Source: Amphiscolops sp. MND2022 (taxonomy: Eukaryota). From it: a stretch of DNA of 64,000 nucleotides. The translations under genes and the position numbers were made by a program. Below the pieces are notes generated by a model that searched no databases, was not told where the DNA came from, and saw only the letters and a program-made list of their open reading frames with translations. Shown in pieces: positions 10,453-57,600 of this stretch. Where the stretch lies: positions 23,064,001 through 23,128,000 of the forward strand of contig OZ076412.1 of NCBI GenBank assembly GCA_964187785.1, read 5' to 3'. How positions within the stretch are numbered: position 1 is the stretch's first letter; the number at the start of each line of letters is the position of its first letter.

Positions 10453-11135
10453 GTAAGATTTTAGTTACAAAATTAGGGAATTGAACACAATTCAGTAGGA
10501 AATTTCCACAGGAATTGACAAATTGCAAAGGTTTTGTGAATAGAATGCAACGTAAGGAAAACGTCAAATGAATGGGTGCTTCCTTTTAGTTGAACTTCAT
10601 ACCAGTGTTTTCAGTGAGTGTTCTGCATTATAATATTGAATCGAAATTGTCAATCGTAGTGATAACGTGTTTATGTTATCAACTGATGTTCTGATTAGCA
10701 TTTTTCAAAGTATGGAATTTGTTGTCCAAAAAGTTTCCGTTGTTTTAGTGTTTATGTGCTTGTATGTTTATCGTAGATATATTTACGTCGTTTTATGTTC
10801 GTGCTAATAATAATGGCAATTACTTGAATTTGTTGTTCCGGTATCATTTGTTCCTTTTCATCAGTATTCGGATGTTACCGCTCTCAAAATTATTTACTCC
10901 GTCTCAGTTACGTCGTCATTTTTGCTAGTCATACTTTTGTCTTGAGCACTTGAATTCCCAACTTGGAAATTGACAAATTGATCACGCCGGCGTGCCTCCG
11001 TCGATGAAAACATCAACCAGGCTCTCATTTTGCCGCCATTTTGACGCTGAAACAGGAAGTGTATTGTTTGAACAAAAATGATTTCAACAAATGTTACGGA
11101 AGGGCGACGCAACTAGGAATTTCGATACCTGATTT

Positions 11136-24254: not shown

Positions 24255-25075
24255 TCATTGCCCACGTCAAACCGTCTAGAGGGGTATTTCTCTGCCCATG
24301 ATTTACTTTCTAGAAAAGATGACAAACATTCGAAAACTTTCAACCCTCATCAAGGCAAGTTCGGGTCTCAGTTGCTGAACGTTGTTTCTCACAAAAACTT
24401 AGGCCTGAAACTTGCTGATCAGCAGCTTCGTATTTCGATTGGTTCACGTCTCGGAGCCAACGTCTGAGTCCTCTGTATATGCCATTATGGTAGGAGTTGA
24501 ATGGGACTTCCTTGCAATAACAGTGCAGGTCGCTTTTTACGTCATGCTACTCTAAATTATCTCAATTGAAAGACGTTGTGATCGCTCGACTTGCCTTCAA
24601 TGCTGGAGCCGCCTGGATTGTACCGAACTGATGGCAACCCCCCAGAAGGTGTAACCATGAGTCCTTGGGAAACGAGTAAAGAGTTGGTGTGGGCTGACAC
24701 AATTGTGGATGATCCTGCACTCAAGATTCTTTGGGAAACGACTAAAGAGCTGGTGGGGGCTGAGACCGTTGTGTTTGCTCCTGCGCTCCTGAATCAATGC
24801 TCCTTATGCAACCCGGGTACCACCGCTATTGAAGCTAAAGAAGGGAAAATTTAGAAGTACCGCAAACTGATAGACAATGGTTGCATTTTTCTAGTGATGG
24901 TCATTGAAGTATAGGGTTCCTTAGGCGAGAGCAGTGAAATTTCCATCTCGCGTGTCTGAAATATTTGCTCTGTCGTTCGCACGATGATCAACGAGGTGGC
25001 GGCGTTTTGTAGCAACGCATTTCAATTACTCTTCAGATCGGCAATGCGGCCTATGTTCTAGGTACTGTGAGCGAC
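24255..25075 (+). mobile_element. 3' remnant of an RLE-type (CRE-like) non-LTR retrotransposon
   Basis: LRISIGSRLG..C...GRFLRHATLN, MLEPPGLYRTDGNPPEGVTMSPW..KELVWADT, EAKEGK and GNAAYVLGT match the CCHC plus PD..D endonuclease tail. Confidence 0.75.
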
Positions 25076-33674: not shown

Positions 33675-36600
33675 ATGACAGATTTTGGTAGATCTTCGTT
33701 TGCTCCGGGACGACCGTCAACTGCCATCCCGCAAAAAGGACGAAAAGTTCCAAAGTTTTTTGAAGAAACTGATGCTTTTGTGTTGAGTACTTTTGGGGGC
33801 TTGTTACCAATTGCTGCCAAAGACAATTTGAAAAATGCCGCCTCGTCAAGTGGACTAATGGACGAAACTAGTGAAAATATTTTATTCGTTTCTTCGAGGA
33901 ATATGTATTTGTGGAGTTTGAAATGGGGCGAACATGGAATGAAAAAGTTTTGTTTGCCTTCTAGCGCTGTTGCTATAACGAGAAGGCACATTTCATTAAC
34001 CGTTTTCCCAAAATCTGTGGCTTTGGTTTGTGTTACCCCGTCTGGCTATCTTCGATACTGGAAAACCTTAACATGTCCAAATGCATTCTCAGAAGCTGCC
34101 CTTCCTATACGTGATCAGGAAGTTTTTTCTGTTGTTCAAGTTATGTTTGAAAAAATGGTCGTCGCTACAACTAATTGCACAATTTTGTTTGTTGATAAGA
34201 ACATGGCAAGCAGAGAATTGAAGATGACGTCTAAAAGTCACCGGAGATTATCAAACACATTTTTTCTCAATCTTTTTCTTGACTCGCGTAAACCTATAGA
34301 AAGTTTTCAGGATTTCGCTATGAGCCATCGCTTTAAGTCTACATCACTACATAGAATTCTTTCGATAGTAATGATATAATTGGAATAGCAATATTAAATA
34401 GAATATATTTCGAAAAATATTCAACCATTTGATTATTGATACATGGTGAAAGTATCTAATATTTTCAAAAAAGGTACTACAATGATAAAAATATTTTCTA
34501 TTTACTTCGCTATTCAATAAAAATGGCCCTTGGTTAGGAAATTGTTTGTTTTGTAGTTATTCTTTCAAAGTCCAGTATGATAATCTCGGAAGGTGGTTTT
34601 ACTTCTCGCCTGGCGTCCGTGACGTCATATTTCATGCCTTCGTCAACCAGTCAAGAAGACATGGAGCAACTCAAAGCTCTTCTAGTGCCTGTCAGATCTG
34701 AAATGTGCATAATGGCGATTTCCAACCTCAATTTATATTTGATCAACTTCCAAGAAGAAAAGCTCGTGTGGTGTGTAAACGTGTGTGATGCTTTGAAACC
34801 CCATTTGGAAGATAAAGATGCCCGAAATATTTTGGTGTTGAATGCGAGCTACTGGGGCGACGAGAGTGACCTGATTTTGCTTTTCAGTTACAAGCAGGGG
34901 TGCGTGTTTACATTTCATGAACATAATACACAAAAAGCGCAAAGTCTCAAATTTGCTCAGAGTGGCCTCTAAGAAATTCTCATGAATTTCAGAAAAGCAA
35001 AAAAATCAAAGGGGCGCCCTGTGGGTTTAGGAAACGAATTGAATTTTTTACGGGAAAAACTTCCGGAAATAAAATTCTCAAGTCCCCTATTTTGCGGTAG
35101 CGTTTCGCCAGCATTCATCATGACTGAAGGATTCTACTCCTCTGGATGTCTGGGTCACTACGGGAAATAAGTCCCAGTGTCGAAAAGGTTAAAGAGGGGA
35201 CCCTTTAGGCTCGAAAAAACTTTGACCCTCTAAAGTTAGCAAACATGTCGTTTTTAAGGAGAATCTCACTAATATAAGAGTGCCGAAAAACAGGGTCGGG
35301 CAGTATTTTTCACGAAAAGCGCCGACTAAAAATAATGGTTCAAAATAGTTTAGCAGAAACCAGCACATCTGTGGACTAATTAATTTTACTTCAATGTTCA
35401 TATACGGAGATGTATAACTATTCCTATGAATTTATCTTGTGGTTAACGATTACATGCGGTTACTAAGAGAAGCAGTCAGATCTGCAAAGTGTCAGATCGC
35501 CCAAATTTCATATAAATGTGCCGTTATGCGATCTGTTCTCATAAAAGATCCTCAATAAAACATGTCCAAATCAAGATTTGAATTCAATCATCAGTAGAAA
35601 TTATTCACTATTAGTAGTAAAGGAAGGGGGGGTTTATGAACGTTTTTGGCTCCCAACCGAAAATTTTCTAAGATAGAATTCTTATGCACGTTTTGGGCTC
35701 CCAAGTCGAAAACTTTCTAAGATAGATTTCTTATGCACGTTTTGGGCTCCCAAGTCGAAAACTTTCAAAGTCTTAAAGCTCAAAGGTCAAACTGACTCTT
35801 TAATCAAAATGTGTGCCATATGTCAAGTTTTGTTTACATTTCCTTTTCTGACTTAGAATAATCTCGACTTAGGAGCCATAAAAATGCAATAAGAATCTGA
35901 GAATCTTAGAATATTTTCCTCTGTGAGCAATGCCATCAGAATATATGACTGAATCTGAGAAACATAGTCAAAATCAGCCCAAGAATGTCCAAAAACTGTT
36001 TTTTGACGTTCTCAAAAACTGTCCGTATGATTCAAACGAATTTTCTATAGTCGTTCTACACTATATTAGAGTCCTATATGTACAAAGGCATCAAAATCGT
36101 ATGGCCGGGATTTGAGAAACAGCCAAAATTGGATCAAAAAGTGACCAAAATCGGCCATTTTTTGACTTTTTTCGATTTTTTCAAAACTGCACGCGATTAG
36201 AGTTCGAACGATTTTTAGTCGGTGCTTTTTAGAAGAAAATTAGCCCAACTATTACAGGGACTAGTTTTTTTCGTCAGATAACAGAATGTATGCGTAGTGG
36301 ACACTTTTTCTACAGAACTATTAAACTACTGGACCGGCAAGCGGGAACGCATCTAAGTTAGTGCAAACGGTCCCCCCTTTCGTGTACTCAATTTTTAACG
36401 AAAGATACAAAATCGGACGGGACTACAGGGTCGCCCCTTTTCGGCACTGTGCGACTTTTTTTGAATTATTTCATGTCGCCAAAGGGTCCCCCTTCATGTT
36501 TTTTTTATATTTTGCAGCAAACTGAAGTTTCAAAAAGCCCAATGGGTCTCTTTTTTAGTTTTTCGGCACTATGAGACTGTTTCAAAATTCTCATTTTTCG

Positions 36601-39600
36601 GTCCTATGTGTGCAGTTAGATCAAAATACTATGTGAAGCTGAGCAACATAGGCAAAATTACTTGAACACTGACCAAAAATATGTACTGTATATTGAAAGA
36701 TAGATCGAACAAAGGTCCTATACGGCTGTGTTCATAGAATCTCAGCTACTTTAGAACTATAGTATGGTACTGTATGTTGAAAGATTGATCGAATATAAAA
36801 CCTATACGATCGTGCTAATTGGATCTTAGCTACTTTAGAAATATAGTATGGTAATGTATATTGAAAGATAGATCGAATATAAGTCCTATAAGACCGTGTT
36901 CATCGAATCTCAGCTACTCTAGACCTATAATATGGTACTGTATATTGAAAGATAGATCGAACAAAGGTCCTATACAGCTGTGTTCATAGTATCTCAGCTA
37001 CTTTACCCCTATCGTTTTGTAAAGTAAATGGAAAGATAAATCGAATATAAGTCCTATACGAAAGTGTTCATCGAATCTTAGCTACTTTAGACTTATAGTA
37101 TGGAACTGTATATTGGAAAATAGATCGGATATAAGTCCAATACGACCGTTCTCATCGAATCTTAACTATTTTAGACCTAAAATATGGTACTGTATATTGA
37201 AAGATAGATCGAACAAAGGTTCTATACGGCTGTATCTCAGCTACTTTACTTCTACAGTATGGTACTGCATATTGAAAGATAGATCGAATATCATTCCTAT
37301 ACGACTGTGTTCATTGAGTCTTAGCTACTTTAGTCCTATCGTTTTGTACTGTAAATGGAAAAATAAATCGAATATAAGTCCTATACGAAAGTGTTCATCG
37401 AATCTTAGCTATTTTAGAAATATAGTATAGTATTGTATATTGAAAGATAGATCGATAAATAAGGCAATACGACCGTGTTCATCAAATCTTAGCTACTTTA
37501 GACCTATATGGTACTGTATATTGAAGGATAGATCGAACATAGGTCCTATACGGCTCTGTTCAATGGATCTTTGCTACTTTAGTCCGATAGTAGGTACAGT
37601 ATACTGAAAGATAGATCGAATGGTCTGGTGGTATGAACTAACTGAAACTACGTTGACAAATGAAACGAACTTCCCATCCAAGTTGAATTTAGAAGTTTTT
37701 AATCATCCTAATAGTGGTCAATATCGCTACAGAATCAACTGAAACCTGAGCGAGTTGATTCAACGAGGTATGGTGATATAAACAAACTGGAACTTTCTTG
37801 ACAACTCAATCGAACTTCCCATTCAAGTTGAACTTTGAAGTTTCCATTCATCCTAATAGTCAATATCAACAAAGAATCAACTTAACATTTCTACGTTGTC
37901 TAATGGAAGTTATACAAACGGTTCTCGGAATTGATAAAACCAAACCTGACTCAAATAAAAACCGTTTCCATTATCATAACACTTTTTGACAATAAACGGT
38001 GTTGGACGAACTTCTGCAACAAACACGCAATGAACAAATCCGGATCGATTGAAGCAATTATTAGCGCTATGTTTAGCGGGAAAACGACCGAGCTTCTCAA
38101 ACGGGTTAAACGTTATAGTCATCGTCAAAAATCCTGCGTCGTGGTCAAATACGCAGGTGACTTGAGATACAGCTCCACGCATGTTGTTTCTCACGACGGG
38201 CAATCACTTGAAGCAATTGGGACATTGACACTGGATGCAGTTTACGAAAAAATGTCGCAATATGACGTTGTAGGTAAGTTGTGGTACCTTGCTTTTCCAT
38301 TCTTTTTATCTGAAAAATTGCTCAGAAATCGTTTCAGGCATTGACGAAGGACAATTTTTCGATGACATTGTTGAAATGTGTGACCAATTGGCTATGCCAA
38401 TGAAAATTGTCGTCGTCGCGGCACTGATTGGTATCCACCGCAGAGAGGGCTTCAAAACATTCTCAATCTCCTACCCAAAGTTGAATCAATTAAGATGTTT
38501 ACCGCTATTTGTGGTATGTGTTCGGAAGAAAGAAGTTGTTTCACAAGGCATCGAACATTAGTGGAACCAGAAGAAATAACAATTGGTGGTGAAAACGATT
38601 TCATCACACTGTGTCGCAAGTGCTGGAAACTCGAAGAACAAAACTAAAGAAAAAATTGAGCATTACAACCTCGATCACAAACACTAAATAACTGATTTCA
38701 TGTGTAACCCGTGAAAGTAAAAGATTTAATTTCAAACTTTTCTAGTCAGAGAACACACAATGCAAAATAGTCCAGTCAACAATTTCAGGACTTAGGAGCT
38801 TGAACAATTGGTTGTGGATGTTCAACTGGTGAGGTGCAGTTAATTCGTTTTCTGTGCTATAGTTTTCTTTCAAAATCATTTTCTTTCATTGTTTTGGATG
38901 TTTGAAAATATTTGTGTCAACTCAGTGAATAATTCTTTTTTTGGTCTCTTGTGCTGCACAAGCAAGCAGTAAACCTTTTAAAAACTCGCGATAATGTTAT
39001 TTTGACAAAAACTCGCTCATGTTCATCTCATTTTCGGTTTGCAGAAACCTCCCGTTACAATACTTGAGCGAATAGTTAAAAATTTCATCGTCGAACACAG
39101 CCTAATTTTCCGGGTAGATTGCTGCGAGCATCGTGACTGAACCAAGGCTGAATGTTTTTCGGTTGGTGTCAGACAGTCAGCAAAAAGTCCATAGCAACAA
39201 ATTGTACATTGTGTCACTGATTTCACTACGCAAAGAAAAATACCCAGAGAACTGCAATCAAGCTATCAATTCTACCAACTCCAATACGAGCAGCAGGGAG
39301 AAGGCTATGCGTCGATGAGAGCAGAACGCGGACTGGTTCCCGGATGAGCGTAGGTACCCTGAGTTTTGAAGATACGAAGATGTAGCATCTCGACTGTATG
39401 AATGAAAATTGAGTTTTGAAAGCTCAAAGGGGAAACTTGAAAGTAAATAGTCTCAGTGCTCAGAGTTTGGTCTTGCAGCTTTATACGAATTCATCCGACT
39501 TGTATACAGCAATCGCACTGTATCAGAACAGTGGCTACACTGGGATTGCTGTGTCTGTTCTGCTGAGCAGAACTTGAATTGCTGCTGTTGTTGGTTTGTA

Positions 39601-42600
39601 TGATTGAATACGAAGAAAAATTGACTAGCAACATCTGAATACTGGTTTGGAGATCCACAGGAAAAAAAAGTGAATTAATAGTCCTACAGAGTAACCAAGA
39701 ATTTGTTGTTCTTGCTAGCACTTTCATTCTGAATCGCGAGATGATTTGTGAATCCTGGCGCAAAATTATTTTCATGATCCTTTGCAAACCATGTATTTTC
39801 AGTTGACGTGGACAGTGTTGAAACAATATTATGAGAGTTTCCAGAAACCTTTCTGAACGTATACTCTAAAAAACTAGGTCAAAAACAACTTACAATCACT
39901 TTCCAAAGCCCGACTCCAAAACGGATTGTATTTGTATCGAAATTATTTCCCACAAATTATCGAATTTTTACCGTTTAAACATTGTGATTCTTGTGTTGAA
40001 ATTGAGTGCCCGGTAACGCTGGGTCGAAAACTTCAATTCAAGCAGGCAGTGTGGTCTGAGTGATTAGTCCTGCAGCTAGATACCATACTAATCTGAATTG
40101 TATCGAGCGATCAAATCACTGGGGTCACACGCAGAAAACTTCGCCGTTACAATACTTGAGCGAATAGGTAAAAATGTCATCGCTAAATACAGCCTAATTT
40201 TCCAGGTAGATTGCTGCGAGCATCGTTACTGAGTCAAGGCTGAATGTTTCTCGGTTGGTGTCAGACAATCAACAAAAAGTGCATAGCAACAAATTGTACA
40301 TTGAGTCACTGATTTCACTACGCAAAGAAACATACCCAGAGAATTGCAATCAAGCTATCAATTCTACCAACTCTAATACGAGCAGCAGGGAGAAGGCTAT
40401 GCGCCTATGGGAGCCGAACGTGGACTGGTTCCCGCATGAGCGCAGGGAGCCTGAGTTTTGAAGAAAAGAAGATAAAAAAATGTAGCTTCTCGACTCATTG
40501 AATGAAAATTGAGTTTTGAAAGCTCAAAAGGAAAACGTGAAAGTAAATAGTCTCAGTGGTCGGAGTTTGGTGTTGCAGCTTTATACGAGTTCATCTGACT
40601 TGTATACAGCGATCGCACTGTATCAGAACAGTGGCTAAACTGGGATTGCAGTGTCTGTTCTACTGAGAAGAACTTGAATTGCTGCTGTTGTTGTTGCTGG
40701 TGTGTATGATTGAATACGAAGAAGAAAAATTGATTGGCAACATCTGAATACTGGTTTGGAAATCCACAGGAAAAAAGTGAATTATTAGTCCTACAGAGAG
40801 ACCAACAATTTGTTGTTCTTGCTAGCACTTTCGTTCTGAATCGCGAGATGAACTTTGTGAATCCTGGCGCAAAATTAGTTTTCATGAACCTTCGCAAACC
40901 ATGTATTTTCAGTTGACGCCGACAGTGTTGAAACAATTTTATAACAGGTTCCAGAAACCTTTCTGAACGTGTACTCTAAAAACTCTTACAAGTCAAAAAC
41001 AACTTACAATCATTTCCAAAGCCCGACTCCAAAACGGATTCTATTTGTATCAAAATTATTCCCCACAAATTATCGAATTTTACCGATTAAACATTGTGCT
41101 TCTTGTGTTGAAATTGAGTGTCCGGTAACGCTGAGACGAAAACTTCAATTCAAGCAGGCAGTGTGGTCTGAGTGATTAGTCCTGCAGCTAGATACCATAC
41201 TAATCTAAATTGTATCAAGCGATCGAATCACTGGGGTCACACTACTGTTTTGATGGTACAATTGAAGACTAGTCGCTCATCTCGTGAAGTCTCACATTAA
41301 CTGCTTCGGGTTTGATTCAATTCTTCACTGACGGATTGCCGTCTCACTCACTGATTTCAAAGCGACTCCTTCATCGCAATGTGGCTCCTGAAGGCAACTG
41401 ACCGAAAACCAAACGACGTCGAAAAAATTGTGACTTTCACGAAGCAGAGGATTTTTGAGACTCCAAGTTGTTTTTGTACAGCTGTTCAAATTTCACATTT
41501 CTGTGCCAACCGTACCTTACCAACTTAACTCCAAGCAGGTGGAGGCCATGCGCCGACGAGCGCAGGGCGCTGACCGGGGTCCGGTCCGCGCTCTTGGCCT
41601 CCACCTGCTTGGAGTTAAGTTGGTGCTATCGAAGCATTCCGGGCCGCGCTCAACGGCGCAAGGCCTCCACCTGCTTGGAGATGAGTTGGTAGAGTTTTGA
41701 CATTTGAACAGCTATACTTCGCCACCGACCGCCGCGATCCGGGTTTCGGCTCGCCGATCGCCGCAATCCGGGTTTCGACTCGCCGATCGCAGCGATCCGG
41801 GTTTCCACTCGCCGACCGCAACAATCCGGGTTTCCACTCGCCGACCGCAGCGATCCGGGTTTCCACTCGCCGCCGCCGAGTCAAAGGGCAACTCTTGGAA
41901 CCAAACCAAACGAGGTCTATGGTACAAAGAATATTTTGATCCTCTCAGCAAACATTTGATTTGGTCCATCCTGGCTCTTTGGGAAATCTGTCTGCAGATC
42001 AAACACCAGCAAAGCTTGTTTTTAAATATGCGGTAATCTTGTTGACTTATCCATCAAACGGGCCTCAAACTTTTGACTAAATCGCACTGTATTCTAAGAT
42101 TGACCTCAGCATTGTATATCAAACTATTCCTACCTATCAAACTGGTCATTTCCTTACTAGTCGTATGATGAAGACTTAACTTGGGTTTACAACCAAATTT
42201 CAGAAACTAAAGTATGATGAGAATGTTAGGTTTCAGACAATGTTGCTTCAGACGATTATAGTGACTGTGATGAATCAGTGAGCTGCAGCAACAGCAGCAG
42301 CAGTGTCCCCAATTCTGACAGTGATACTTAAATCGACTCCCTCAATATTTTAGATGCCCTCAATAACAGCTGCTCGTCGCGTGCTTCGAGCTACGCGAGG
42401 CCACTGAAACAAGCTTCGAACTCTGACTCGGCAAATTCCATTTGGTACCGTTTCATTCATAGTGTATCGATCACTTGATATTCACCATTGATATTAACCT
42501 AATTGTTAATTTAGATGCGGCCGATCCTGGCCTTAATCAATCAATCAGCTTCTAGCTCTAACGATGATGGAGAATTCGCAAATGTTCTTGACTGGGATGC

Positions 42601-45600
42601 TCTATCTGACTGAATATTCGTCAAAAACGCCAAATAAAATAAAGACACGTTCTAACCATTAGTTGTCTCGTCAGATCATCGATTTTCTGCAGGCGTTCAC
42701 TTGTTATCCTAGTTGTGTGCACCATTCCTGACTTTGGAAGCCCTGCAGTTGAAATAAAATTTTTGAAAAATTCTGAAAAATTTCGAAGTCCCACAACGTT
42801 TGCTCGGGAAATGCTAGAACGCTGAAACCTCGTTGAAAAGGCCAAACGGTTTTGCTCGGGAAAATTTTGGGCAGGGGTTCCCCCTATACAGGAGGGGTCT
42901 TGGAAGAACTTTTTCGGTAAAACGGTAGTGATCAATCGGGATTTTCCTGAAAAATGGTCAAAAACGCCAAATTAAAATAAAGACACGTTCTAACCAGTAT
43001 TTTTCTCGTCACATCATGGACTTTCTGCATGCGTTCACTTGTACTTCTAGTTGTGTGCACGATTCCTGACTTTGGAAGCCCTGAAGTTGAAATAAAATTT
43101 TTGAAAAATTCTGAAAATTTTCAAGTCCCACAACTATTGCTCGGGAAATGCTAGAACGGCGAAACCTCGTTAAAAAGGCCGAATGGTTTTGCTCGGGAAA
43201 AATTTGGGAAGATGTTCCCCCTATACAGGAAGGGTCTTGGAAGAACTTTTTCGGAAAAACGGTAGTGATAAATCGGGATTTTCCTGAAAATTCGTCAAAA
43301 ACGCCAGGTTAAAATAAAGACAAGTTCTAACCAGTAGTTTTCTCGTCAAATCATCGACTTTCTGCAGGCGTTCACTTGTAATCCTAGTTGTGTGCACGAT
43401 TCCTGTCTCTGGAAGCCCTGCAGTAGAACTAAAATTTTCGAAAATTTCTGAGAATTTTCTAAGTCCTACAACTTTTGCTCGGAATATGCTAGAACGCTGA
43501 AACCTCGTTAAAAAGGCCGAATGGTTTCGCTCGGGAAAAATTTGGGCAGGGGTTCCCCCTATACAGGAGGGGTCTTGTAAGAATTTTTTCGGAAAAACGG
43601 TAGTGATAAATCGGGATTTTCCTGAAAGTTCGTCAAAAACGGTCCTAAGTAAAGGCCAGGTTAAGATAAGAAGATGTGCTAGCCAGTATTTTTCTCGCCA
43701 CATCATGGACTTTCTGCATGCGTTCACTTGTACTTCTAGTTGTGTGCACGATTCCTGACTTTGGAAGCCCTGAAGTTGAAATAAAATTTTTGAGAAATTC
43801 TGAAAATTTTCAAGTCCCACAACTATTGCTCGGGAAATGCTAGAACGGTGAAACCTCGTTAAAAAGGCCAAATGGTTTTGCTCGGGAAAAATTTGGGAAG
43901 ATGTACCCCCTATACAGGAAGGGTCTTGGAAGAACTTTTTCGGAAAAACGGTAGTGATAAATCGGGATTTTCCTGAAAATTCGTCAAAAACGCCAGGTTA
44001 AAATAAAGACAAGTTCTAACCAGTAGTTTTCTCGTCAAATCATCGACTTTCTGCAGGCGTTCACTTGTAATCCTAGTTGTGTGCACGATTCCTGTCTCTG
44101 GGAGCCCTGCAGTAGAACTAAAATTTTCGAAAATTTCTGAAAATTTTCTAAGTCCTACAACTTTTGCTCGGGAAATGCTAGAACGCTGAAACCTCGTTAA
44201 AAAGGCCAAATGGTTTCGCTCGGGAAAAATTTGGGCAGGGGTTCCCCCTATACAGGAGGGGTCTTGTAAGAATTTTTTCGAAAAAACGGTAGTGATAAAT
44301 CGGGATTTTCCTGAAAGTTCGTCAAAAACGGTCCTAAGTAAAGGCCAGGTTAAGATAAGAAGATGTGCTAGCCAGTATTTTTCTCGTCACATCATGGACT
44401 TTCTGCATGCGTTCACTTGTACTTCTAGTTGTGTGCACGATTCCTGACTTTGGAAGCCCTGAAGTTGAAATAAAATTTTTGAGAAATTCTGAAAATTTTC
44501 AAGTCCCACAACTATTGCTCGGGAAATGTTAGAACGGTGAAACCTCGTTAAAAAGGCCAAATGGTTTTGCTCTGGAAAAATTTGGGAAGATGTACCCCCT
44601 ATACAGGAAGGGTCTTGGAAGAACTTTTTCGGAAAAACGGTAGTGATAAATCGGGATTTTCCTGAAAATTCGTCAAAAACGCCAGGTTAAAATAAAGACA
44701 AGTTCTAACCAGTAGTTTTCTCGTCAAATCATCGACTTTCTGCAGGCGTTCACTTGTAATCCTAGTTGTGTGCACGATTCCTGTCTCTGGGAGCCCTGCA
44801 GTAGAACTAAAATTTTCGAAAATTTCTGAAAATTTTCTAAGTCCTACAACTTTTGCTCGGGAAATGCTAGAACGCTGAAACCTCGTTAAAAAGGCCAAAT
44901 GGTTTCGCTCGGGAAAAAATTGGGCAGGGGTTCCCCCTATACAGGAGGGGTCTTGTAAGAATTTTTTCGGTAAAACGGTAGTGATAAATCGGGATTTTCC
45001 TGAAAAATCGTCAAAAACGACAAATTAAAATAAAGACACGTTCTAACCAGTAGGTTTCTCGTCAAATCATCGACTTTCTGCAGGCGTTCACTTGTAATCC
45101 TAGTTGTGTGCACGATTCCTGACTTTGGAAGCCCTGCAGTTGAAATAAATTTTTGAAAAATTCTGAAAATTTTCAAAGTCCCACAACTTTTGCTCGGGAA
45201 ATGCTAGAACGCTGAAACCTCGTTAAAAAGGCCAAATGGTTTTGCTCGGGAAAAATTCGGGCAGGGGTTCCCCCTATACAGGAGGGGTCTTGTAAGAACT
45301 TTTTCGGTAAAACGGTAGTGATAAATCGGGATTTTCCTGAATATTCGTCAAAAACGCCAGGTTAAAACAAAGACACGTTCTAACCAGTAGTTTTCTCGTC
45401 AAATCATCAACTTTCTGCAGGCGTTCGCTTGTAATCCTAGTTGTGTGCACGTTTCCTGACTTAGGAAGCCCTGCAGTTGAAATAAAATTTTTGAAAAATT
45501 CTGAAAATTTTCTAAGTCCCACAACTTTTGCTCGGGAAATGCTAGATAGCTGAAACCTCGTTAAAAAAGCCAAATGGTTTTGCTCGGGAAAATTTGGGCA

Positions 45601-48600
45601 GGGGTTTCCCCCTATACAGGAGGGGTCTTGTAAGAACTTTTTCGGTAAAACGGTAGTGATAAATTGGGATTTTCCTGAATATTCGTCAAAAACGCCAGGT
45701 TAAAACAAAGACACGTTCTAACCAGTAGTTTTCTCGTCAAATCATCAACTTTCTGCAGGCGTTCGCTTGTAATCCTAGTTGTGTGCACGTTTCCTGACTT
45801 AGGAAGCCCTGCAGTTGAAATAAAATTTTTGAAAAATTCTGAAAATTTTCTAAGTCCCACAACTTTTGCTCGGGAAATGCTAGAACGCTGAAACCTCGTT
45901 AAAAAAGCCAAATGGTTTGCTCGGGAAAATTTGGGCAGGGGTTCCCCCTATACAGGAGGGGTCTTGTAAGAACTTTTTCGGTAAAACGGTAGTGATAAAT
46001 TGGGATTTTCCTGAAAAATGGTCAAAAACGCCAAATTAAAATAAGGACACGTTCTAACCAGTAGTTTTCTCGTCAAATCATCGACTTTCTGCAGGCGTTC
46101 ACTTGTAATCCTAGTTGTGTGCACGATTCCTGACTTTGGAAGCCCTGCAGTTGAAATAAAATTTTTGAAAAATTCTGAAAATTTTCTAAGTCCCACAACT
46201 TTTGCTCGGGAAATGCTAGAACGCTGAAACCTCGTTAAAAAGGCCAAATGGTTTTGCTCGGGAAAAATTTGGGCAGGGGTTCCCCCTATACAGGAGGGGT
46301 CTTGTAAGAACTTTTTCGGTAAAACGGTAGTGATCAATCGGGATTTTCCTGAAAAATGGTCAAAAACGCCAAATTAAAATAAAGACACGTTCTAACCAGT
46401 AGTTTTCTCGTCAAATCATCGACTTTCTGCAGGCGTTCACTTGTAATCCTAGTTGTGTGCACGATTCCTGACTTTGGAAGCACTACAGTTGAAATAAAAT
46501 TTTTGAAAAATTCTGAAATATTTCTAAGTCCCACAACTTTTGCTCGGGAAATGCTAGAACGCTGAAACCTCGTTAAAAAGGTCAATTGGTTTTGCTCGGG
46601 AAAAATTTGGGCAGGGGTTCCCCCTATGAAGGGGTCTTGGAAGAATTTTTCAGAAAAACGGGAGTGACAACTCGGGATTTTCGTGAAAATCAAAACGAAT
46701 CAAATAATAAAGTTTGCCAATTTCAACTGGTTATTAGATTTTAAACACTCGTTAAAACGGGTTTGTCAAAAATCTCAAGGGGGATCCTTTTGTACCATTG
46801 GAAAATTCGCCAAGAAACGTTATATTCGTTATACGTTAAATCCGGTATGGATCATTTTTGTCGAAGGGGACTCATTAGCACTCGAGCGTCAGTTGCCTTG
46901 TTCGTTTGCAAACAAAATTCGCGCCTAGTCTACCGAAATCCCCTTTTTCTATGCAATCTGTGAGCTAATTAGAAAGAAGTGTTGACATATCGTTTCACCA
47001 ATTTCAACAAATTCAACTCAAGATTCGTGAGAAAAATAAATTAACTCTCTGAACGTTCAGAATTTGTGATTGGAAAACAGTTACAGCTGAGAGGTTTTTC
47101 TAGGTCGTTTCGGAGCCTTGAATACAACCAGGGCCTGATCATCTTCATCTGTCGCTTCTCCTTGTTGCACTTCTTCAGCTGTCTGTGCTTCTTGTTTTTC
47201 TTGCTCTGCTTTCTCCTCCACTGATGCAGTTTCTCCAACTTGTCCCAGTACCTCTCTTGCTTCATCTTCACCGTGTGATTCCAGCCAGCTACGATACTTC
47301 AATACCAACCCGCAATGATGGATGCTTAGGTGAAACTTTTTCTCCATCCGATCTTTGTCCTGATTGAATTTGAACGCCTTGAGTGTATAATACACTGCCT
47401 TTTTAGAAACCAAATCAACGTTGTAGATGTTTGTTGAGACACGGAAGACGTCGTGTTCTCCTAAATTCGATAAGAACTCACGAGACAAACTATAAATGTT
47501 ACCAACTTTCACCTTTTGTAATGAGCGGGAAAAGAACAAATGGAAGTAACTGTCACGTTTGAACATTTTCAATGATTTTACCTGAAATTTCAACAGTTTG
47601 AATTGACGTTTTTGCCTTTTTGTTTCGATTTTTAGACCTTTTTCTTTGCCCTGATTCTAAATCTTATCCAAGTCCTAAAATTATAGATCTCAACTCGTAT
47701 TGTGTTCGTTTTTGACTCTAGAATATTAGATCTTTTTCTTTACTCCCACCCGAAATACAGTAACTTGAAATTCCATGAAGCACCAATTCAAATTTCAGAA
47801 ACATACTTTGTTGGTGAAATATGATTGTAGTGAACCTGCTGTCCGTTTTCAACCCGTTATCTTCGGTGACCGGAGGCTTATAAATAAGTCCCACAACTTT
47901 TGCTCGGGAAATGCTAGAACGCTGAAACCTCGTTAAAAAGGCCAAATGGTTTTGCTCGGGAAAAATTTGGGCAGGGGTTCCCCCTATACAGGAGGGGTCT
48001 TGTAAGAACTTTTTCGGTAAAACGGTAGTGATCAATCGGGATTTTCCTGAAAAATGGTCAAAAACGCCAAATTAAAATAAAGATACGTTCTAACCAGTAG
48101 TTTTCTCGTCAAATCATCGACTTTCTGCAGGCGTTCACTTGTAATCCTAGTTGTGTGCACGATTCCTGACTTTGGAAGCACTGCAGTTGAAATAAAATTT
48201 TTGAAAAATTCTGAAAATTTTCTAAGTCCCACAACTTTTGCTCGGGAAATGCTAGAACGCTGAAACCTCGTTAAAAAGGTCAATTGGTTTTGCTCGGGAA
48301 AAATTTGGGCAGGGGTTCCCCCTATGAAGGGGTCTTGGAAGAATTTTTCAGAAAAACGGGAGTGACAACTCGGGATTTTCGTGAAAATCAAAACGAATCA
48401 AATAATAAAGTTTGCCAATTTCAACTGGTTATTAGATTTTAAACACTCGTTAAAACGGGTTTGTCAAAAATCTCAAGGGGGATCCTTTTGTACCATTGGA
48501 AAATTCGCCAAGAAACGTTATATTCGTTATACGTTAAATCCGGTATGGATCATTTTTGTCGAAGGGGACTCATTAGCACTCGAGCGTCAGTTGCCTTGTT

Positions 48601-51600
48601 CGTTTGCAAACAAAATTCGCGCCTAGTCTACCGAAATCCCCTTTTTCTATGCAATCTGTGAGCTAATTAGAAAGAAGTGTTGACATATCGTTTCACCAAT
48701 TTCAACAAATTCAACTCAAGATTCGTGAGAAAAATAAATTAACTCTCTGAACGTTCAGAATTTGTGATTGGAAAACAGTTACAGCTGAGAGGTTTTTCTA
48801 GGTCGTTTCGGAGCCTTGAATACAACCAGGGCCTGATCATCTTCATCTGTCGCTTCTCCTTGTTGCACTTCTTCAGCTGTCTGTGCTTCTTGTTTTTCTT
48901 GCTCTGCTTTCTCCTCCACTGATGCAGTTTCTCCAACTTGTCCCAGTACCTCTCTTGCTTCATCTTCACCGTGTGATTCCAGCCAGCTACGATACTTCAA
49001 TACCAACCCGCAATGATGGATGCTTAGGTGAAACTTTTTCTCCATCCGATCTTTGTCCTGATTGAATTTGAACGCCTTGAGTGTATAATACACTGCCTTT
49101 TTAGAAACCAAATCAACGTTGTAGATGTTTGTTGAGACACGGAAGACGTCGTGTTCTCCTAAATTCGATAAGAACTCACGAGACAAACTATAAATGTTAC
49201 CAACTTTCACCTTTTGTAATGAGCGGGAAAAGAACAAATGGAAGTAACTGTCACGTTTGAACATTTTCAATGATTTTACCTGAAATTTCAACAGTTTGAA
49301 TTGACGTTTTTGCCTTTTTGTTTCGATTTTTAGACCTTTTTCTTTGCCCTGATTCTAAATCTTATCCAAGTCCTAAAATTATAGATCTCAACTCGTATTG
49401 TGTTCGTTTTTGACTCTAGAATATTAGATCTTTTTCTTTACTCCCACCCGAAATACAGTAACTTGAAATTCCATGAAGCACCAATTCAAATTTCAGAAAC
49501 ATACTTTGTTGGTGAAATATGATTGTAGTGAACCTGCTGTCCGTTTTCAACCCGTTATCTTCGGTGACCGGAGGCTTATAAATAAAGTCTGTCGGCGTTT
49601 GGCTGAACGCGAGCTGGGTAAAGATTATTTGAACCCAGTCCAAGTCCATCAGTTCAGAGAAAATTGATTTATCAACCATCAACTTGATTTCGTCCTCGTT
49701 GTGTTTTTGCATTGTAATTTGCATTTTGTCAGTGTTTTCCACGACTGTTAGTTCCCTACCATTGCCAGTTCACAAACAAGAAGTTCGATTGATCCATTTG
49801 AACGAATGAGTTGGGGCTGATTGTCAAAGATTTTTCGGTGTTTAGCTCGAACAAAGTTTCGGTGTTCTGTTCTGAGTTGTTCTTTGGGAAATTTGCTGAT
49901 TGCGGGTTTGTATGATTGTTAATCTGTGAGTTGATGGTTACTTTTGTTCATTCAGTCATTTGATAACGGATGAAATTTATTGAAGTTTAAAATCTGATAG
50001 CAGTTGAATTTAATTGAAGTTTAAATTTTTCAAAGAGGCAGTTCAATCATCTTGACACTAGCTAACTGAGTCAATGTTTGAAAAGTATTAAAATTCGGTT
50101 CATTTTCCGGTGTTGTCTGCGATAAAAGACCATTTCGATTGATAATCAATAATTACCATAGTTTATGATCATAATTATTGACTATTTGGTCTCGAAATAT
50201 TTGGCATGAATATGAACTTCAGAAAAGAGTCAGTTTGACCTTTGAGCTTTAAGACTTTGAAAGTTTTCGAGTTGGGAGCCCAAAACGTGCATAAGAAATC
50301 TATCTTAGAAAATTTTCGGTTGGGAGCCCAAAACGTGCATAAGAATTCTATCTTAGAAAATTTTCGGTTGGGAGCCAAAAACGTTCATAAACCCCCCTTC
50401 CTTTACTACTACTATTATTCATATTTCTAGTCGGCGCTTTTAGAATACAAGAGCCGGACTATTACAGTCACTCGTTTTTTAGTTTGTTCAGCTAAATGAA
50501 TACCTCGGAAACGCATCTAAGCAGAGAGTCTCTTTCATTTTTAATTTTTAACGTAACATACAAAACCGGACCAGACTAAAGTGTTCCCCTTTCGATTTTT
50601 TTTCGGCACTGTGTGAGACTTTTCGAAAATGCCTCCAAAAAGTTCCCCTCATTTTTTTTGCAGCAAATCGGGTGTTTAAAAACCCCAAAGAGTCCCCCTG
50701 TTACATCTTTCGGTACTATGAGACAGTTTCAAAATTCTCATTTTTCTCTGAAATTTGGTTTTCTCAATGCTTCATTTTTTCAATACTATTCGAATTTTTG
50801 ACGTTACTTCCGAAGTAAGTTGCGTTTCACTAGAGAGGAAGCTGAGGTTCGAAAAAGCGCTCCTGTCTAGCCCTGCACGCTATATCATAATTTTTGAAGC
50901 GTTTTCAGAGCACCAAAGGCACGCTTTGGCTGTTTCAAAACTGTTGTTCTACATCTTCTTAGTTGTTTGTACTGTTACTTAAGCAATTTTTAGTTGATCT
51001 AAGAACCTAGCTCATCGATCAAGTTATAATGTTGTTTTTTAGAACCATTCAGTCGACACATTTTTTGTGATGTACCTGCTCAATTTCATCAAAACCTATT
51101 GAAATTACTATTCCTCTGTTTTTTCGCGTCATGCGACAATACAATGAAATCCGCGTAGCCTCTAGTGTTTCATTGTATGATCATTTGTGGTCCCTGAATA
51201 AGTTTCGTTTTCTAATATTCCGTACCCCTGCTTGTTGAAGGCAAAGTGATGCTTCATTGTATGCTTTCGCCCATCTGAGTTTCGACTTGACAAAATCTAC
51301 TGCGGAATTCTCAGTTGCGATTTTCCCTTTCGACTTAAATTCAGTGTTATCAAATCCAAACATTCAGGTAGATAGAGCATGAGCCATTCCTTGAAAACTT
51401 TTCAATATTTTTAACCTTCTAAAACCCGGATATTAGAAAGTTCGATTAAAAAAAACACCAATAGTCGTTCCCCTGATGTTGATTATATCCGGGATCCATT
51501 GTAATTAATTTATTTTCATTCATTCTTTTCATTGTGTTTTCAATTAAGCACTGGAAGTTCAAACTGATGATTGGTTCTTGCTCTACAGGTTAACATCAAT

Positions 51601-54600: not shown

Positions 54601-57600
54601 ATTCTCAGAAGTCAGGCAGCTTGGAGAGTAATTTCGACAACGCAGTATCAATCATGAGATTGTACATTGCTACTTTTGACAAGACGTCGGAGATTAGACA
54701 GCAGAACAAGCATTTGGAAGTGACCGAAGAAAACTTTTGTTTTTGGAATTTGAGTGATGCGTTTGGTGATTATATCAAGTGATGACCATTTTTTAAATGT
54801 GACTCCCATTCCGGGAAGACTAGATTACACTTAAACCTTTCGCATCAAAATAGGAATTCCCTTTTGCCAAATATCTTGTGTTTTTAAGCTGAGATAACTG
54901 AAAAAAAACGTTTAAATGTTTTAGCTATAGTAAATTTCCACGTATCACCCCTACTTTTGATATACAAGAGCTATTTTTAAATGATGCGCATATGAATCGC
55001 ATTCCCAACTTTTAAGTTAAAACTGACTTTCAGGTGCGACTTATATGCGGAGATTTACCGTATATAAGTTCATTTCGATATTTTAAAATCATTTTCTTTA
55101 TTATGAAACTTCCAGTGAATGGTCATCACTTACTCTGATTGGTTTATTCAGGGCGCACTTTGATTGGCTGAAACTGAACGTGGATTTGTTTTCGTCAAAT
55201 GTGACTACCATTGAACTTCTGCAATGCCATTATGACTTTTCTGTGGTCTGTCTCAAGGCTTACGGGGCTTTTTGTGAGCTGCTTTCTAAGGTTCAGTCCT
55301 ATTGTGGTGTCCAGCAATATAATCCAGGGAAAATAATTTTGAGCAATGCTAGATGCAAGTAAACCTGGGCTTTCAGAAAAACCAGCTACTTCGACAATTG
55401 ACTCATCCTACAATGAGCCACGTTGCGTGGAAGTCATCAGCTAGAAATTAATGCATTAATGATTTCATCAAATTCCAGTATCTGGATCACTGAAATTTTA
55501 GCGTTACATTCGTTAACTTGGGGGGGGGGGTATGGTGTTTTGGAAGTGGAAAGAAACTAAGCATCTTTTTAGTTCCTGAAACATTAAGTTGAAAAAAAAC
55601 AGTTGTCAAAGAGACTTAGAACCAGGTGATTTGAAAGTGTGAAAGTCGGCTCTTAAGGCTCAAAACGAACCTACTCTCCGAAGCGTAAAGAATTCTCTTT
55701 TGAATAAATTCTCAATTCCATAGTACGGAAAAATCCAAATGGGGACAAAATATCGAAAAAATGGAGATGATTGAATAATAACTAATTTTTTTTTCAAATG
55801 ATTCTGTCAACATTGAAAGGAAGGACCCCTACGAACAATTAGCTATTTCGTAGGAATTTGATAAAAATTTTGCATTCGGCATGAAATGGTCACTGTGACC
55901 TAGTGATGTTCATTTCATTTTTTAGAAAAAAATGATTGTCGATTTACGCTTTCAAAGTTTGTGAGAAATGGTAATTTAAATTAATTCGATTTCCGATATT
56001 TAAATGTTCATTACTGCTTCAACCAGATTGAAAAAAAGCGACGAAAAGCCACTACAATAGTCGCGTTTTAATTCTTGAAGAGCCAATTAATAATGGTGGG
56101 TTGTAAGTTGTCATTGTGGGGTATTCACAACTGGACATTACTGGCGACAAAGGCTGAGAGAAAAAATGAACTCTCGTCAACGATGGAATCGAGAGTGAAA
56201 GACATGCGATCTATGTTTATATCCTTTTTCGCTGGAATGAACCAACCAACATTCTCACTCGGCTTAGCAGAGAAGTTCCTCGATTTCGAAACTTTGATTT
56301 CCATATGCCTGGAAACGAAAGACTTCGAAAAGTAATCATTGGTTCCACAATTCAGATCACTCATTTGCTTCGATAGCATATTTTTGACTGCAGCAGGGTT
56401 TTGACATGGCTGATTTTTAGTCGGCGCTTTTCTTAAGAAAACAGCCCGACTATTACAGTCACTGGTTTTTTTTATTTAAGACAGACTCGAAGCGACGAAC
56501 GTTAACGTTCAACTAAAGGAAACTAAATACCAAGGAAACGCATGTAAATTATTCCAAAGGATCCCCCCTTTGGTTTTTTACTTTTTAAACGTTACCTACA
56601 AGCCCAGACGGGACTAAAGGGTCCCCCCTTTCGATTTTTTTTTCGGCACTGTGCGACTTTTTTTCGAATTTTTTTTATGTCCCCAAAGGGTCCCCCCTTT
56701 GTGTTTTTTGTTATTTTGCTACAGAATGCGTGTTTATAAATCAAAAAGAGTCCCCCTTTTACATTTTTCGGCACATTTTCCGAAAGAAATTTTTTTTCGA
56801 AAATTTCAAGTTTTCCAAAAAAAAATGTTTTGCGCTTTTTGAGCCTTAGATATAGCGCCGACTCGAGACGTTCCCGTCTTGTTTCTGCTAATCGCTAAAC
56901 CGCCCATTCAAAAATCACTTTTCGCTGAAGTTTTTCTCCAAACTTTTGAGTGTTTGATTTCAAATATCTTCCAAATTCGAAGGATAACTCAATATACTTT
57001 TGCAAGAGAAACAAACTGGAATTTTTATACCGCGTGGGTTTTACAAGACATAGAGTTGGATTTTTTTGATTGAAATTCTTCCTCAGAATCCGACTATACT
57101 CAGAGGAAGAACAGATTTTGATTTTGGACATTCTATCAATTGCCGTTGATTTGAATCGCTGAAAATTTTCTGCGCGGCCGCTAATTAGCGGTGTCAAATC
57201 TCTGTACTACAGATGTACTGGAGGAATGAAGTTTCTTTCGCAAGTATCGCGTTTTTGGCCTTTAGTAGTTTGTATTTTAATAGTGAAATTATGTCAAACG
57301 TTTCAAAAATTCTTGGCAAAATATTTGATCGAATTTCTATAAAATTATCGTTTATTCAGTAGTTTCTGTCAATGGCTTCAATAATGTAATCTACTGCCGT
57401 GAGCTTTTTCTTTATGGTTATTATAGCTTTCGTCTGTTTTCGTTTTGGAAATACTAAAATACCGAAAATACAGTACTGTGATGAAAGAATTGACCCCCTT
57501 ATATTTCCAGCTCATATGTCTAAAACTACTTGAGGATCAGGAGAAATGCTCCCGATAAAATTGCAATTTAATCTAGTTTATAATCTTGTTTGTTTAAACC

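What the first reader, a model, noticed from the sequence alone, without database searches (positions are those of the whole stretch)
35607..50416. A 14.8-kb non-autonomous, cargo-carrying Polinton/Maverick inside a nucleoporin intron
Seen: ~190-bp TIRs with about 5 differences, termini AGTAGT...ACTACT, and a perfect 6-bp TSD ACTATT. Known: long TIRs starting with AG/AGT simple repeats plus a 6-bp TSD are the signature of Polintons/Mavericks (protein-primed PolB, retroviral-like integrase), and cargo genes on Mavericks have been reported in nematodes. Seen: none of the core genes is recognisable inside. The interior holds a TK1 copy, orphan ORFs and four kinds of tandem array. Inference: a Pack-MULE-like 'Pack-Maverick' that keeps only cis ends and is mobilised in trans. 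Near-identical TIRs and an intact TSD around much older-looking cargo suggest it moved after the cargo decayed.
Basis: partly seen in the sequence, partly recalled or inferred. Interest (0 to 1): 0.92.

Follow-up and report, generated by a model that had tools for sequence, protein, structure and literature searches.

The report
Gene-less Maverick-ended transposon carrying thymidine kinase
This 14.8-kb insert is a real, recently mobile DNA transposon with the end motif and 6-bp target duplication typical of Maverick/Polinton virus-like elements. It encodes none of their proteins, only a passenger thymidine kinase gene and repeat arrays, so it must be moved by enzymes made elsewhere.

Summary
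The element proper is window 35613-50410. It has 189/187-bp terminal inverted repeats (TIRs) about 97% identical, termini 5'-(AGT)2...(ACT)2-3', and a perfect 6-bp target site duplication (TSD), ACTATT.

It belongs to a multi-copy family in the same assembly (ENA ERZ25074608):
- 14 of 15 element ends on 11 contigs start exactly at AGTAGTA, each with different flanks.
- A second complete copy (L011) is 98% identical and has its own perfect 6-bp TSD, ATTGAG.
- A third copy (L009) is 99.3-99.8% identical to L011.

The (AGT)2//(ACT)2 motif plus a 6-bp TSD is the published Maverick signature. None of the 30 interior reading frames I tested matches a polymerase, integrase, ATPase, protease or capsid family.

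- The thymidine kinase (TK) is a family-wide passenger, not a capture private to this copy. It has a shared 64-nt GT..AG intron, is intact in at least one copy, and carries one frameshift here.
- The usual family member is a large palindrome with TK on both arms. The window copy is an asymmetric derivative.
- The two complete palindromes lack 6-bp TSDs.

Verdict: non-autonomous Maverick-ended element, confidence about 0.7. It is a new variant of a known kind.

The parts
33675..34379 (+). Upstream host exon-like ORF (234 aa), weakly Nup133 N-terminal-like
   Evidence: Pfam Nucleoporin_N at E=0.0058, below the cut-off. The exact protein is on ENA contig ctg185847_106x_l, and L006 is 100% identical to window 23675-44379.
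35607..35612 (.). Left copy of the 6-bp target site duplication, ACTATT
35613..35801 (+). Left terminal inverted repeat (189 bp). It starts AGTAGTAA, followed by a G-run and 2.8 copies of a 49-bp subrepeat.
35802..36670 (.). Subterminal unique segment 'A'. No protein-family match.
   Evidence: 98% identical in L011 and 92% in L012. A 60-bp core is conserved in all subfamilies. ORFs have no Pfam hit.
36671..37621 (.). 84-bp satellite array (11.3 copies; 252-bp higher-order unit)
   Evidence: The same array sits at the same position in all family members, 0.5 to more than 9.7 kb long.
37622..38029 (+). Spacer upstream of TK (segment 'B' and the TK 5' region)
   Evidence: Conserved at 81-96% in other copies
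38030..38647 (+). Thymidine kinase (TK1 family) gene. It has two exons and a 64-nt GT..AG intron shared by all 14 copies examined. In this copy it is broken by one frameshifting indel, with no stops. Start codon, stop codon and splice sites are kept.
   Evidence: Pfam PF00265.
38648..39051 (.). Segment 'C' downstream of TK
   Evidence: Conserved at 81-93% in other copies
39052..41242 (-). Two direct copies of a 1.1-kb unit (U1.1), 90% identical, each with an orphan ORF on the minus strand
   Evidence: There are 10 clusters of homologous ORFs, all from the same ENA assembly, with no Pfam or PDB match.
41243..41691 (.). GC-rich former palindrome centre. It holds a 46-nt inverted repeat, 41518-41563 / 41646-41691.
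   Evidence: In L001, L003, L005, L008 and L012 the arms turn over within this segment; in L010 they turn within the adjoining U1.1 unit.
41692..42520 (.). Start of the right half that is specific to the asymmetric subfamily. It includes a 29-bp tandem repeat (41725-41876, 5.3 copies).
   Evidence: It is present in L009 and L011 but absent from the palindromic copies.
42521..46690 (.). 338-bp satellite array (about 12 units in two alternating variants). The ORFs read through it are probably spurious.
   Evidence: The array has about 13 units in L011 and about 17 in L009. No Pfam hits.
46691..49769 (-). Two tandem copies of a 1.7-kb unit (U1698), 99.7% identical. Each has an identical 191-aa orphan ORF, and the repeat unit includes one 338-bp satellite unit.
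   Evidence: A homologous ORF cluster of 12 members lies in the same assembly. No Pfam or PDB match.
49770..50223 (.). Subterminal segment 'D' next to the right TIR. It is unrelated to segment A.
   Evidence: 98-99% identical in L009 and L011
50224..50410 (-). Right terminal inverted repeat (187 bp), ending ...CCTTTACTACT
50411..50416 (.). Right copy of the 6-bp target site duplication, ACTATT
56072..56332 (+). Downstream host exon-like ORF, weakly similar to the Nup133 C-terminal region
   Evidence: Both best PDB hits are Nup133 (3i4r_B, 5a9q_3) at E=0.2-0.34

Best explanation
Window 35613-50410 is a non-autonomous member of a multi-copy DNA transposon family. Its cis ends are of the Maverick/Polinton type: 189-bp TIRs, 5'-(AGT)2...(ACT)2-3' termini and a 6-bp TSD.

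Shown: the element encodes no recognisable replication, integration or capsid protein. Inferred: it is inserted by a retroviral-type integrase supplied in trans by an autonomous Maverick of the same genome, and perhaps copied by that Maverick's protein-primed polymerase. The terminal trinucleotide repeat would suit such a polymerase.

The interior is passenger DNA:
- A TK1-type thymidine kinase gene with a spliceosomal intron. It was therefore taken up as genomic DNA from a cellular gene early in the family's history, and has evolved nearly neutrally since.
- Satellite arrays of 84, 29 and 338 bp.
- Orphan units of 1.1 and 1.7 kb.

The ancestral architecture is a long palindrome: TIR, A, 84-bp array, TK, C, U1.1, GC-rich centre, then the mirror image. 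The window copy keeps the left arm and the centre. Its right arm is replaced by unrelated DNA that still ends in a matching TIR.

This asymmetric subfamily moved recently. A TK-less deletion derivative has inserted at two or more other loci.

Shown: discrete ends, TSDs, family structure, absence of core genes, recent copies. Inferred: the identity of the mobilising enzymes and the mode of replication.
For: - The TIRs and perfect TSD are confirmed.
- 14 of 15 ends from 11 insertions on 11 contigs begin exactly at AGTAGTA, each with unrelated flanks. The 15th end has a single substitution in the motif.
- The complete copy L011 (1971-13062) has a perfect and different 6-bp TSD, ATTGAG.
- The window copy is 98.1-98.3% identical to L011, and L011 is 99.3-99.8% identical to L009, at three different loci.
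- Literature: in vertebrate Mavericks the commonest end motif is 5'-(AGT)2//(ACT)2-3' with perfect 6-bp TSDs, and TIRs span 46-1,447 bp (PMC8097293). Polinton TSDs are 6 bp. The other 6-bp families, IS3EU and GingerRoot, have TA..TA termini (PMC10045372).
- None of the 30 interior ORFs matches a Maverick core family or any transposase in Pfam. The gene tables of the 11 related loci fetched from the same assembly show only TK, plus retrotransposon genes in the flanks.
- The TK gene model has a 64-nt intron (GTAAGT...TTTCAG) and gives an uninterrupted 184-aa product in L001. The intron's splice sites are kept in 12 of 14 copies.
- Median dN/dS among copies is 0.72.
Against: - No autonomous Maverick (protein-primed polymerase plus integrase) sharing these ends was found. 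No whole-assembly search was possible.
- The (AGT)2 motif is documented for vertebrates. The host here is unidentified; it looks like an invertebrate animal.
- The two complete palindromic copies lack a 6-bp TSD. L003 has a 72-bp flanking direct repeat instead, and L012 has none. So 2 of 4 complete copies fit the rule, although the two that do not are the old ones, with arms 90-95% identical.
- The boundary at the window's right end is slippery, (ACT)2 or (ACT)3. A 3-bp TSD (ATT) cannot be formally excluded for this copy alone, but L011 removes the ambiguity.
Confidence: 0.7

Rival explanations
1. A non-autonomous element of another, possibly undescribed, integrase or transposase superfamily that happens to give 6-bp TSDs. 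An IS3EU/GingerRoot-like or Foldback-like family would be examples. On this reading the long TIRs built of subrepeats and the palindromic bodies are foldback-transposon features, not Maverick features.
For: - No Maverick protein is linked to these ends.
- The family is dominated by long palindromes whose TIRs contain tandem subrepeats, which resembles foldback elements (own knowledge).
- IS3EU and GingerRoot also give 6-bp TSDs.
Against: - The termini are AG..CT with a doubled AGT. IS3EU/GingerRoot have TA..TA or TG..CA.
- Drosophila Foldback and Galileo elements give 9-bp and 7-bp TSDs (own knowledge, not tested here).
- The exact (AGT)2//(ACT)2 plus 6-bp combination is the published Maverick motif.
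Confidence: 0.15
2. A remnant or satellite of a linear double-stranded DNA virus, with inverted terminal repeats, terminal tandem arrays and a viral TK. On this reading it was integrated by host repair rather than by a transposon enzyme, and later amplified by segmental duplication.
For: - TK genes and terminal repeat arrays are common at the ends of large DNA virus genomes (own knowledge).
- The two complete palindromic copies lack 6-bp TSDs, and one has a 72-bp flanking duplication, as repair-mediated capture could give.
Against: - The TK has a 64-nt spliceosomal intron with canonical sites, shared by all 14 copies.
- Its nearest named relatives are animal cellular TK1s at about 45-51% identity.
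- The terminal 19-nt motif gave no hit in IMG/VR.
- The young copies have exact ends and perfect 6-bp TSDs at unrelated loci. That indicates enzyme-mediated integration, not segmental duplication.
Confidence: 0.07
3. Two independent solo TIR insertions that by chance bracket 14.6 kb of ordinary intron DNA, with ACTATT a coincidence.
For: None beyond the a-priori possibility. The left and right subterminal segments (A and D) are unrelated.
Against: The same left end, interior order and right end recur at 98-99.8% identity in L011 and L009 on other contigs. L011 is bounded by its own 6-bp TSD.
Confidence: 0.01

Closest known systems
Maverick/Polinton elements with 5'-(AGT)2//(ACT)2-3' ends (described for vertebrates; PMC8097293)
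   Same: The same 6-nt end motif, perfect 6-bp TSDs, and a TIR length (189 bp) inside the reported 46-1,447-bp range.
   Different: - None of the eight core genes is present (polymerase, integrase, ATPase, protease, capsids and others).
- The interior is satellites plus a cellular-type TK.
- Many family members are near-complete palindromes, so their effective inverted repeats are 4 to more than 12 kb long.
- The host is not a vertebrate as far as can be judged.
Cargo-carrying Mavericks of Caenorhabditis nematodes (bioRxiv 10.1101/2022.07.12.499685; seen only as title and abstract)
   Same: A Maverick-type vehicle carrying a gene that is not a core gene.
   Different: As I understand them (own knowledge), those are autonomous or formerly autonomous Mavericks that keep viral genes alongside the cargo. 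Here no viral gene remains in any of about a dozen copies.
Pack-MULEs / transduplicating non-autonomous DNA transposons (own knowledge)
   Same: TIR-bounded non-autonomous elements that carry host-derived genic DNA with introns and are amplified in trans.
   Different: - The superfamily signature differs (9-11-bp TSDs in MULEs).
- Here a whole gene with start, stop and intron was taken up once, not a mosaic of fragments, and it was inherited by the whole family.
Foldback-type elements and Tlr1 of Tetrahymena (Tlr1 has at times been viewed as a non-autonomous Polinton; PMC5499653)
   Same: Long, complex inverted termini containing tandem subrepeats, and large palindromic bodies.
   Different: - Tlr1 encodes proteins (helicase-polymerase fusion, integrase).
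- Drosophila FB elements give 9-bp TSDs (own knowledge).
- Neither is known to carry TK.

Membership tests
Maverick/Polinton | 6-bp target site duplication | tested here: met
   ACTATT in the window and ATTGAG in L011. Not met in the two old palindromic copies, L003 and L012.
Maverick/Polinton | Terminal inverted repeats of about 10^2-10^3 bp | tested here: met
   189/187 bp at 96.9% identity. The published range is 46-1,447 bp.
Maverick/Polinton | Short tandem-repeat end motif, 5'-(AGT)2 ... (ACT)2-3' | tested here: met
   14 of 15 ends in 11 insertions begin at AGTAGTA; the 15th has one substitution. The motif is as published.
Maverick/Polinton | [quoted passage not shown] | tested here: not met
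   No Pfam hit among 30 interior ORFs or among the called genes of related loci. This is expected for a non-autonomous derivative, but it means membership by gene content fails.
Maverick/Polinton | Encodes a retroviral-like (rve) integrase | tested here: not met
   No rve hit inside any copy. The rve hits in the window and in the L001 and L005 flanks belong to LTR retrotransposons with reverse transcriptase.
Maverick/Polinton | Capsid, packaging ATPase and adenain-like protease genes | tested here: not met
   No matches.
Maverick/Polinton (as a non-autonomous member) | An autonomous element in the same genome shares the TIR sequence | not testable with these tools
   The assembly (ENA ERZ25074608) can only be reached through exact-protein look-ups, and those caps are exhausted. 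The terminal motif gave nothing related in IMG/VR or JGI metagenomes.
IS3EU / GingerRoot | 6-bp TSD with TA..TA (occasionally TG..CA) termini | tested here: not met
   The TSD length fits, but the termini are AG..CT.
Foldback (Drosophila FB-type) | Long TIRs made of tandem subrepeats, with a 9-bp TSD | tested here: not met
   Subrepeats and palindromic bodies are present, but the TSD is 6 bp. The 9-bp figure is from own knowledge.
Thymidine kinase, TK1 type (Pfam PF00265) | Profile match above the curated cut-off over the whole domain | tested here: met
   Bit scores of 69.8, 38.6 and 43.1 against a cut-off of 20.6 on the window's pieces. The spliced L001 model covers positions 6-188 of a 201-position TK profile at 214 bits.
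Pack-type gene capture (transduplication) | A parental cellular gene exists elsewhere in the host genome from which the passenger was copied | not testable with these tools
   The host's own TK1 was not identified. The nearest TKs outside the family are about 45-51% identical. The shared spliceosomal intron argues for a cellular DNA source.

The most novel reading that the evidence does not exclude
The palindromic TK elements may be natural 'snap-back' defective genomes of a Maverick. On this reading, strand-switching during protein-primed replication produced hairpin-like molecules that retain only the replication and integration ends. These persist as a satellite lineage that parasitises the Maverick's polymerase, integrase and perhaps capsid. 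The TK gene on each arm would have been kept at first because it aided nucleotide supply. The asymmetric window subfamily would be a recombinant that escaped the palindrome and is the currently active form.
Probability: 0.15. Interest if true: 0.8.

Novelty: new variant of a known kind. Interest (0 to 1): 0.6.

Why it matters
Mavericks/Polintons are usually described as large self-sufficient virus-like elements. In the open-access literature searched here, a phrase search for non-autonomous Polintons or Mavericks found one paper, which mentions them only in passing.

This family has dozens of copies, keeps about 190 bp of Maverick-type ends and no Maverick gene, and inserted recently with perfect TSDs. 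That implies the Maverick integration machinery can act in trans on short cis sequences, and it marks out which sequences those are.

The family also shows that such ends can carry and spread a complete cellular gene and several kilobases of satellite DNA. That bears on how Mavericks move genes and seed satellite arrays.

The long-palindrome architecture, and the contrast in TSDs between palindromic and asymmetric copies, are unexplained and could say something about how these elements replicate.

Tried and rejected
1. 'Intronless, twice-frameshifted TK retrocopy' was my first reading, from the three Pfam pieces (recorded in notebook entry 1). I rejected it. One discontinuity is a 64-nt GT..AG intron shared by all 14 copies, and L001 is uninterrupted.
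2. I looked for an empty site or alternative haplotype. The exact upstream exon is on a single contig that carries the same insertion (L006 is 100% identical to the window). No empty allele was found.
3. An exhaustive HMMER search with the 218-aa TK ORF (P0005) was meant to find the TK donor. The top scores were inflated by tandem-TK proteins (trypanosomes, Anaeramoeba). Single-domain hits are about 45-51% identical and taxonomically mixed: horseshoe crab, planthoppers, nematodes and unnamed metagenomic proteins. No donor and no host identification came out of it.
4. A test for selection on TK gave a median dN/dS of 0.72, so there is no clear constraint.
5. The terminal 19-mer in JGI metagenomes and IMG/VR gave two chance hits with no further similarity, and none, respectively.
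6. Rfam and tRNA scans of the window found nothing.
7. The orphan ORFs of U1.1 and U1698 have no significant Pfam or PDB match.
8. I considered using ORFs read through the TIR as protein handles to find more ends. I dropped the idea because the collection's gene caller had not called such ORFs in any locus seen.
9. Further window ORFs at 13-31 kb were scanned for Maverick genes. None was found; they show only retroelement domains or nothing.

Full report

**1.
- ACTATT occurs at 35607-35612 and at 50411-50416.
- Between the two copies, the element (35613-50410, 14,798 bp) starts AGTAGTAAAGG and ends CCTTTACTACT.
- The TIRs (35613-35801 and 50224-50410) align at 96.9% with two single-base gaps.
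- Each TIR contains 2.8 copies of a 48-49-bp subrepeat.
- The right end has one extra ACT unit. For this copy alone, a 3-bp TSD with a slipped repeat cannot be strictly excluded.

**2. The interior**

From left to right:
- a unique segment A;
- an 84-bp satellite (11.3 copies);
- a TK1-type thymidine kinase gene on the + strand (38030-38647);
- segment C;
- two direct copies of a 1.1-kb unit (90% identical);
- a GC-rich stretch with a 46-nt inverted repeat;
- a 29-bp tandem repeat;
- a 338-bp satellite (about 12 units);
- two copies of a 1.7-kb unit (99.7% identical, with identical 191-aa ORFs);
- segment D;
- the right TIR.

I scanned thirty stop-free ORFs covering every non-satellite stretch against Pfam. 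Only TK scored. There was no polymerase, integrase, ATPase, protease or capsid match. Rfam and tRNA scans found nothing.

**3. It is a family, and the window is part of a public assembly**
- A protein search with the TK piece returned 21 clusters of TK ORFs at 56-94% identity (about 31 distinct sequences), all from ENA.
- The upstream host exon is found exactly on contig ctg185847_106x_l of ENA analysis ERZ25074608. That locus (L006) is 100% identical to window 23675-44379. So the relatives come from the same genome.
- I fetched eleven related loci (L001-L005, L007-L012).
- Mapping the window's segments onto them shows one conserved order: TIR, A core, 84-bp array, B, TK, C, U1.1, GC-rich segment.
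- In L001, L003, L005, L008, L010 and L012 the order then turns over at or near the GC-rich segment and runs back as a mirror image. The usual member is therefore a palindrome, with a TK on each arm where both arms could be seen. The complete ones are 9.0 kb (L012) and 13.8 kb (L003). L010 exceeds 16 kb because its 84-bp array is longer than 9.7 kb.
- The window copy keeps the left arm and the centre (the 46-nt inverted repeat at 41518-41691). From about 41692 onward it is unrelated to any palindromic copy.

**4. Discrete ends and TSDs**
- Fourteen of fifteen ends, from eleven insertions on eleven contigs, begin exactly at AGTAGTA, with unrelated flanking sequence. The fifteenth (L012 right end) has one substitution in the motif.
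- L011 is a complete copy of the window's asymmetric subfamily (1971-13062). It is bounded by a perfect 6-bp duplication of different sequence, ATTGAG.
- Two independent perfect 6-bp matches are far beyond chance, at about 1/4096 each.
- L011 and L009 lack the B-TK-C block and share that deletion. They are 99.3-99.8% identical to each other and 98.1-98.8% identical to the window copy.
- So a TK-less derivative has transposed recently, and TK is not needed for movement.
- This disposes of the 'two solo ends' scenario.

**5. What the ends say**
- Barreat and Katzourakis (PMC8097293) report that the commonest end motif of vertebrate Mavericks is 5'-(AGT)2//(ACT)2-3', with perfect 6-bp TSDs and TIRs of 46-1,447 bp.
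- Kojima (PMC10045372) lists 6 bp as the characteristic TSD of Polintons. The only other 6-bp families named there, IS3EU and GingerRoot, have TA..TA or TG..CA termini.
- The element therefore carries the full cis signature of a Maverick and none of its genes.
- The inference that a Maverick integrase, and possibly its protein-primed polymerase, acts on it in trans is reasonable but unproven. I could not search the assembly for an autonomous partner, because the only tools that reach it were exhausted.
- The terminal 19-mer finds nothing related in JGI metagenomes or IMG/VR.

**6. The TK**
- All 14 copies examined share a discontinuity in the coding sequence that behaves as a 64-nt intron. The sites are GTAAGT...TTTCAG in L001 and GTGAGT...TTTCAG in L005.
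- Removing it as it stands gives an uninterrupted 184-aa product in L001. That product covers positions 6-188 of a 201-position TK profile at 214 bits.
- Lesion counts against that model are below. No copy has an altered acceptor site.

| Copy | Frameshifts | Stops | Other |
|---|---|---|---|
| L001 | 0 | 0 | none |
| L005 | 0 | 0 | altered start codon only |
| window | 1 | 0 | none |
| L002 | 1 | 0 | none |
| L003a | 1 | 0 | none |
| L004 | 1 | 0 | none |
| L007 | 1 | 0 | none |
| L008a | 1 | 1 | none |
| L003b | 2 | 0 | none |
| L010a | 2 | 0 | none |
| L008b | 2 | 1 | none |
| L012a | 0 | 1 | altered donor site |
| L012b | 3 | 0 | altered donor site |
| L010b | 4 | 2 | none |

- The window's frameshift state is shared by 7 of the 13 other copies, including only one arm of L012. 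It is either a mutational hotspot or an old lineage marker.
- Pairwise dN/dS has a median of 0.72, so evolution is close to neutral.
- Outside the family, the nearest TKs are about 45-51% identical animal TK1s: horseshoe crab, planthoppers and several nematodes.
- A spliceosomal intron and animal-type affinities point to a cellular gene taken up as DNA early in the family's history. They argue against a viral TK or a retrocopy. The donor was not found.

**7. Host gene**
- The + strand exon-like ORF upstream (33675-34379) hits Pfam Nup133 N-terminal at E=0.0058.
- For a + strand ORF downstream (56072-56332), both best PDB matches are Nup133, at E=0.2-0.34.
- Each hit is weak. Together they fit an insertion within an intron of a divergent Nup133-like gene.
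- The host species is unknown. BEL/Pao, Ty3 and LINE elements around the loci indicate an animal genome.

**8. What remains odd**
- Both complete palindromes lack a 6-bp TSD. L003 is flanked by a 72-bp direct repeat (94% identical, abutting the right end and 4 bp from the left end), which occurs nowhere else in the ~260 kb I held. L012 has no flank repeat.
- Their arms are 90-97% identical, so they are old, but ordinary decay does not erase a TSD completely.
- Possible causes are ectopic exchange between copies or a different route of insertion for palindromic molecules. I could not tell which.
- The source of the asymmetric right half is also unknown.

**9. Verdict**
The cargo is family-wide and only lightly damaged. 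The family's ground plan is palindromic. The trans-acting Maverick remains hypothetical.
- This is a new variant of a known kind and is of moderate to high interest.

Noticed in passing
window 1445-7976 (-): An apparently intact Ty3/Gypsy-type LTR retrotransposon interior. It has a 1,479-aa pol ORF (protease, RT, RNase H, integrase) and a 579-aa gag ORF with a zinc knuckle. The LTRs were not mapped.
   Followed up: partly
window 16226-16837 (+) and 27042-27668 (+): An ORF with a LINE-type endonuclease domain (Exo_endo_phos_2), and a separate zinc-knuckle gag-like ORF. The long series of + strand ORFs between 13 and 32 kb otherwise has no Pfam match. The region upstream of the Nup133-like exon seems to be mostly retroelement debris.
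   Followed up: partly
The matching ENA contig record covers window 23675 onward only in what I fetched.
   Followed up: no
L003 4400-4471 and 18250-18320: A 72-bp direct repeat (94% identical) flanks a 13.8-kb palindromic family member that has no 6-bp TSD. The repeat is not found elsewhere in the sequence held.
   Followed up: partly
L001 7606-9971: A tandem duplication inside one arm. A second 84-bp array, spacer B and the first ~250 bp of TK precede the full TK. This shows that the arrays and the gene region are reshuffled within copies.
   Followed up: no
L010 1-9734: The 84-bp satellite of one palindrome arm runs for more than 9.7 kb, against 0.95 kb in the window. The element's internal satellite expands greatly in place.
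   Followed up: no
L009 (contig ctg183416_178x_l): This contig's stated coverage (178x) is well above the 74-119x of the other contigs. Near-identical copies of the asymmetric subfamily may be collapsed in the assembly.
   Followed up: no
window 10262-10452, 20831-20934, 24665-24788, 61561-61641: Four further short tandem repeats (periods 48, 52, 66 and 30 bp) lie outside the element.
   Followed up: no
window 35315-35334 vs 50422-50441: A 20-nt inverted match (95%) between the host flanks on the two sides of the insertion. It is probably a chance match or part of an older repeat.
   Followed up: no
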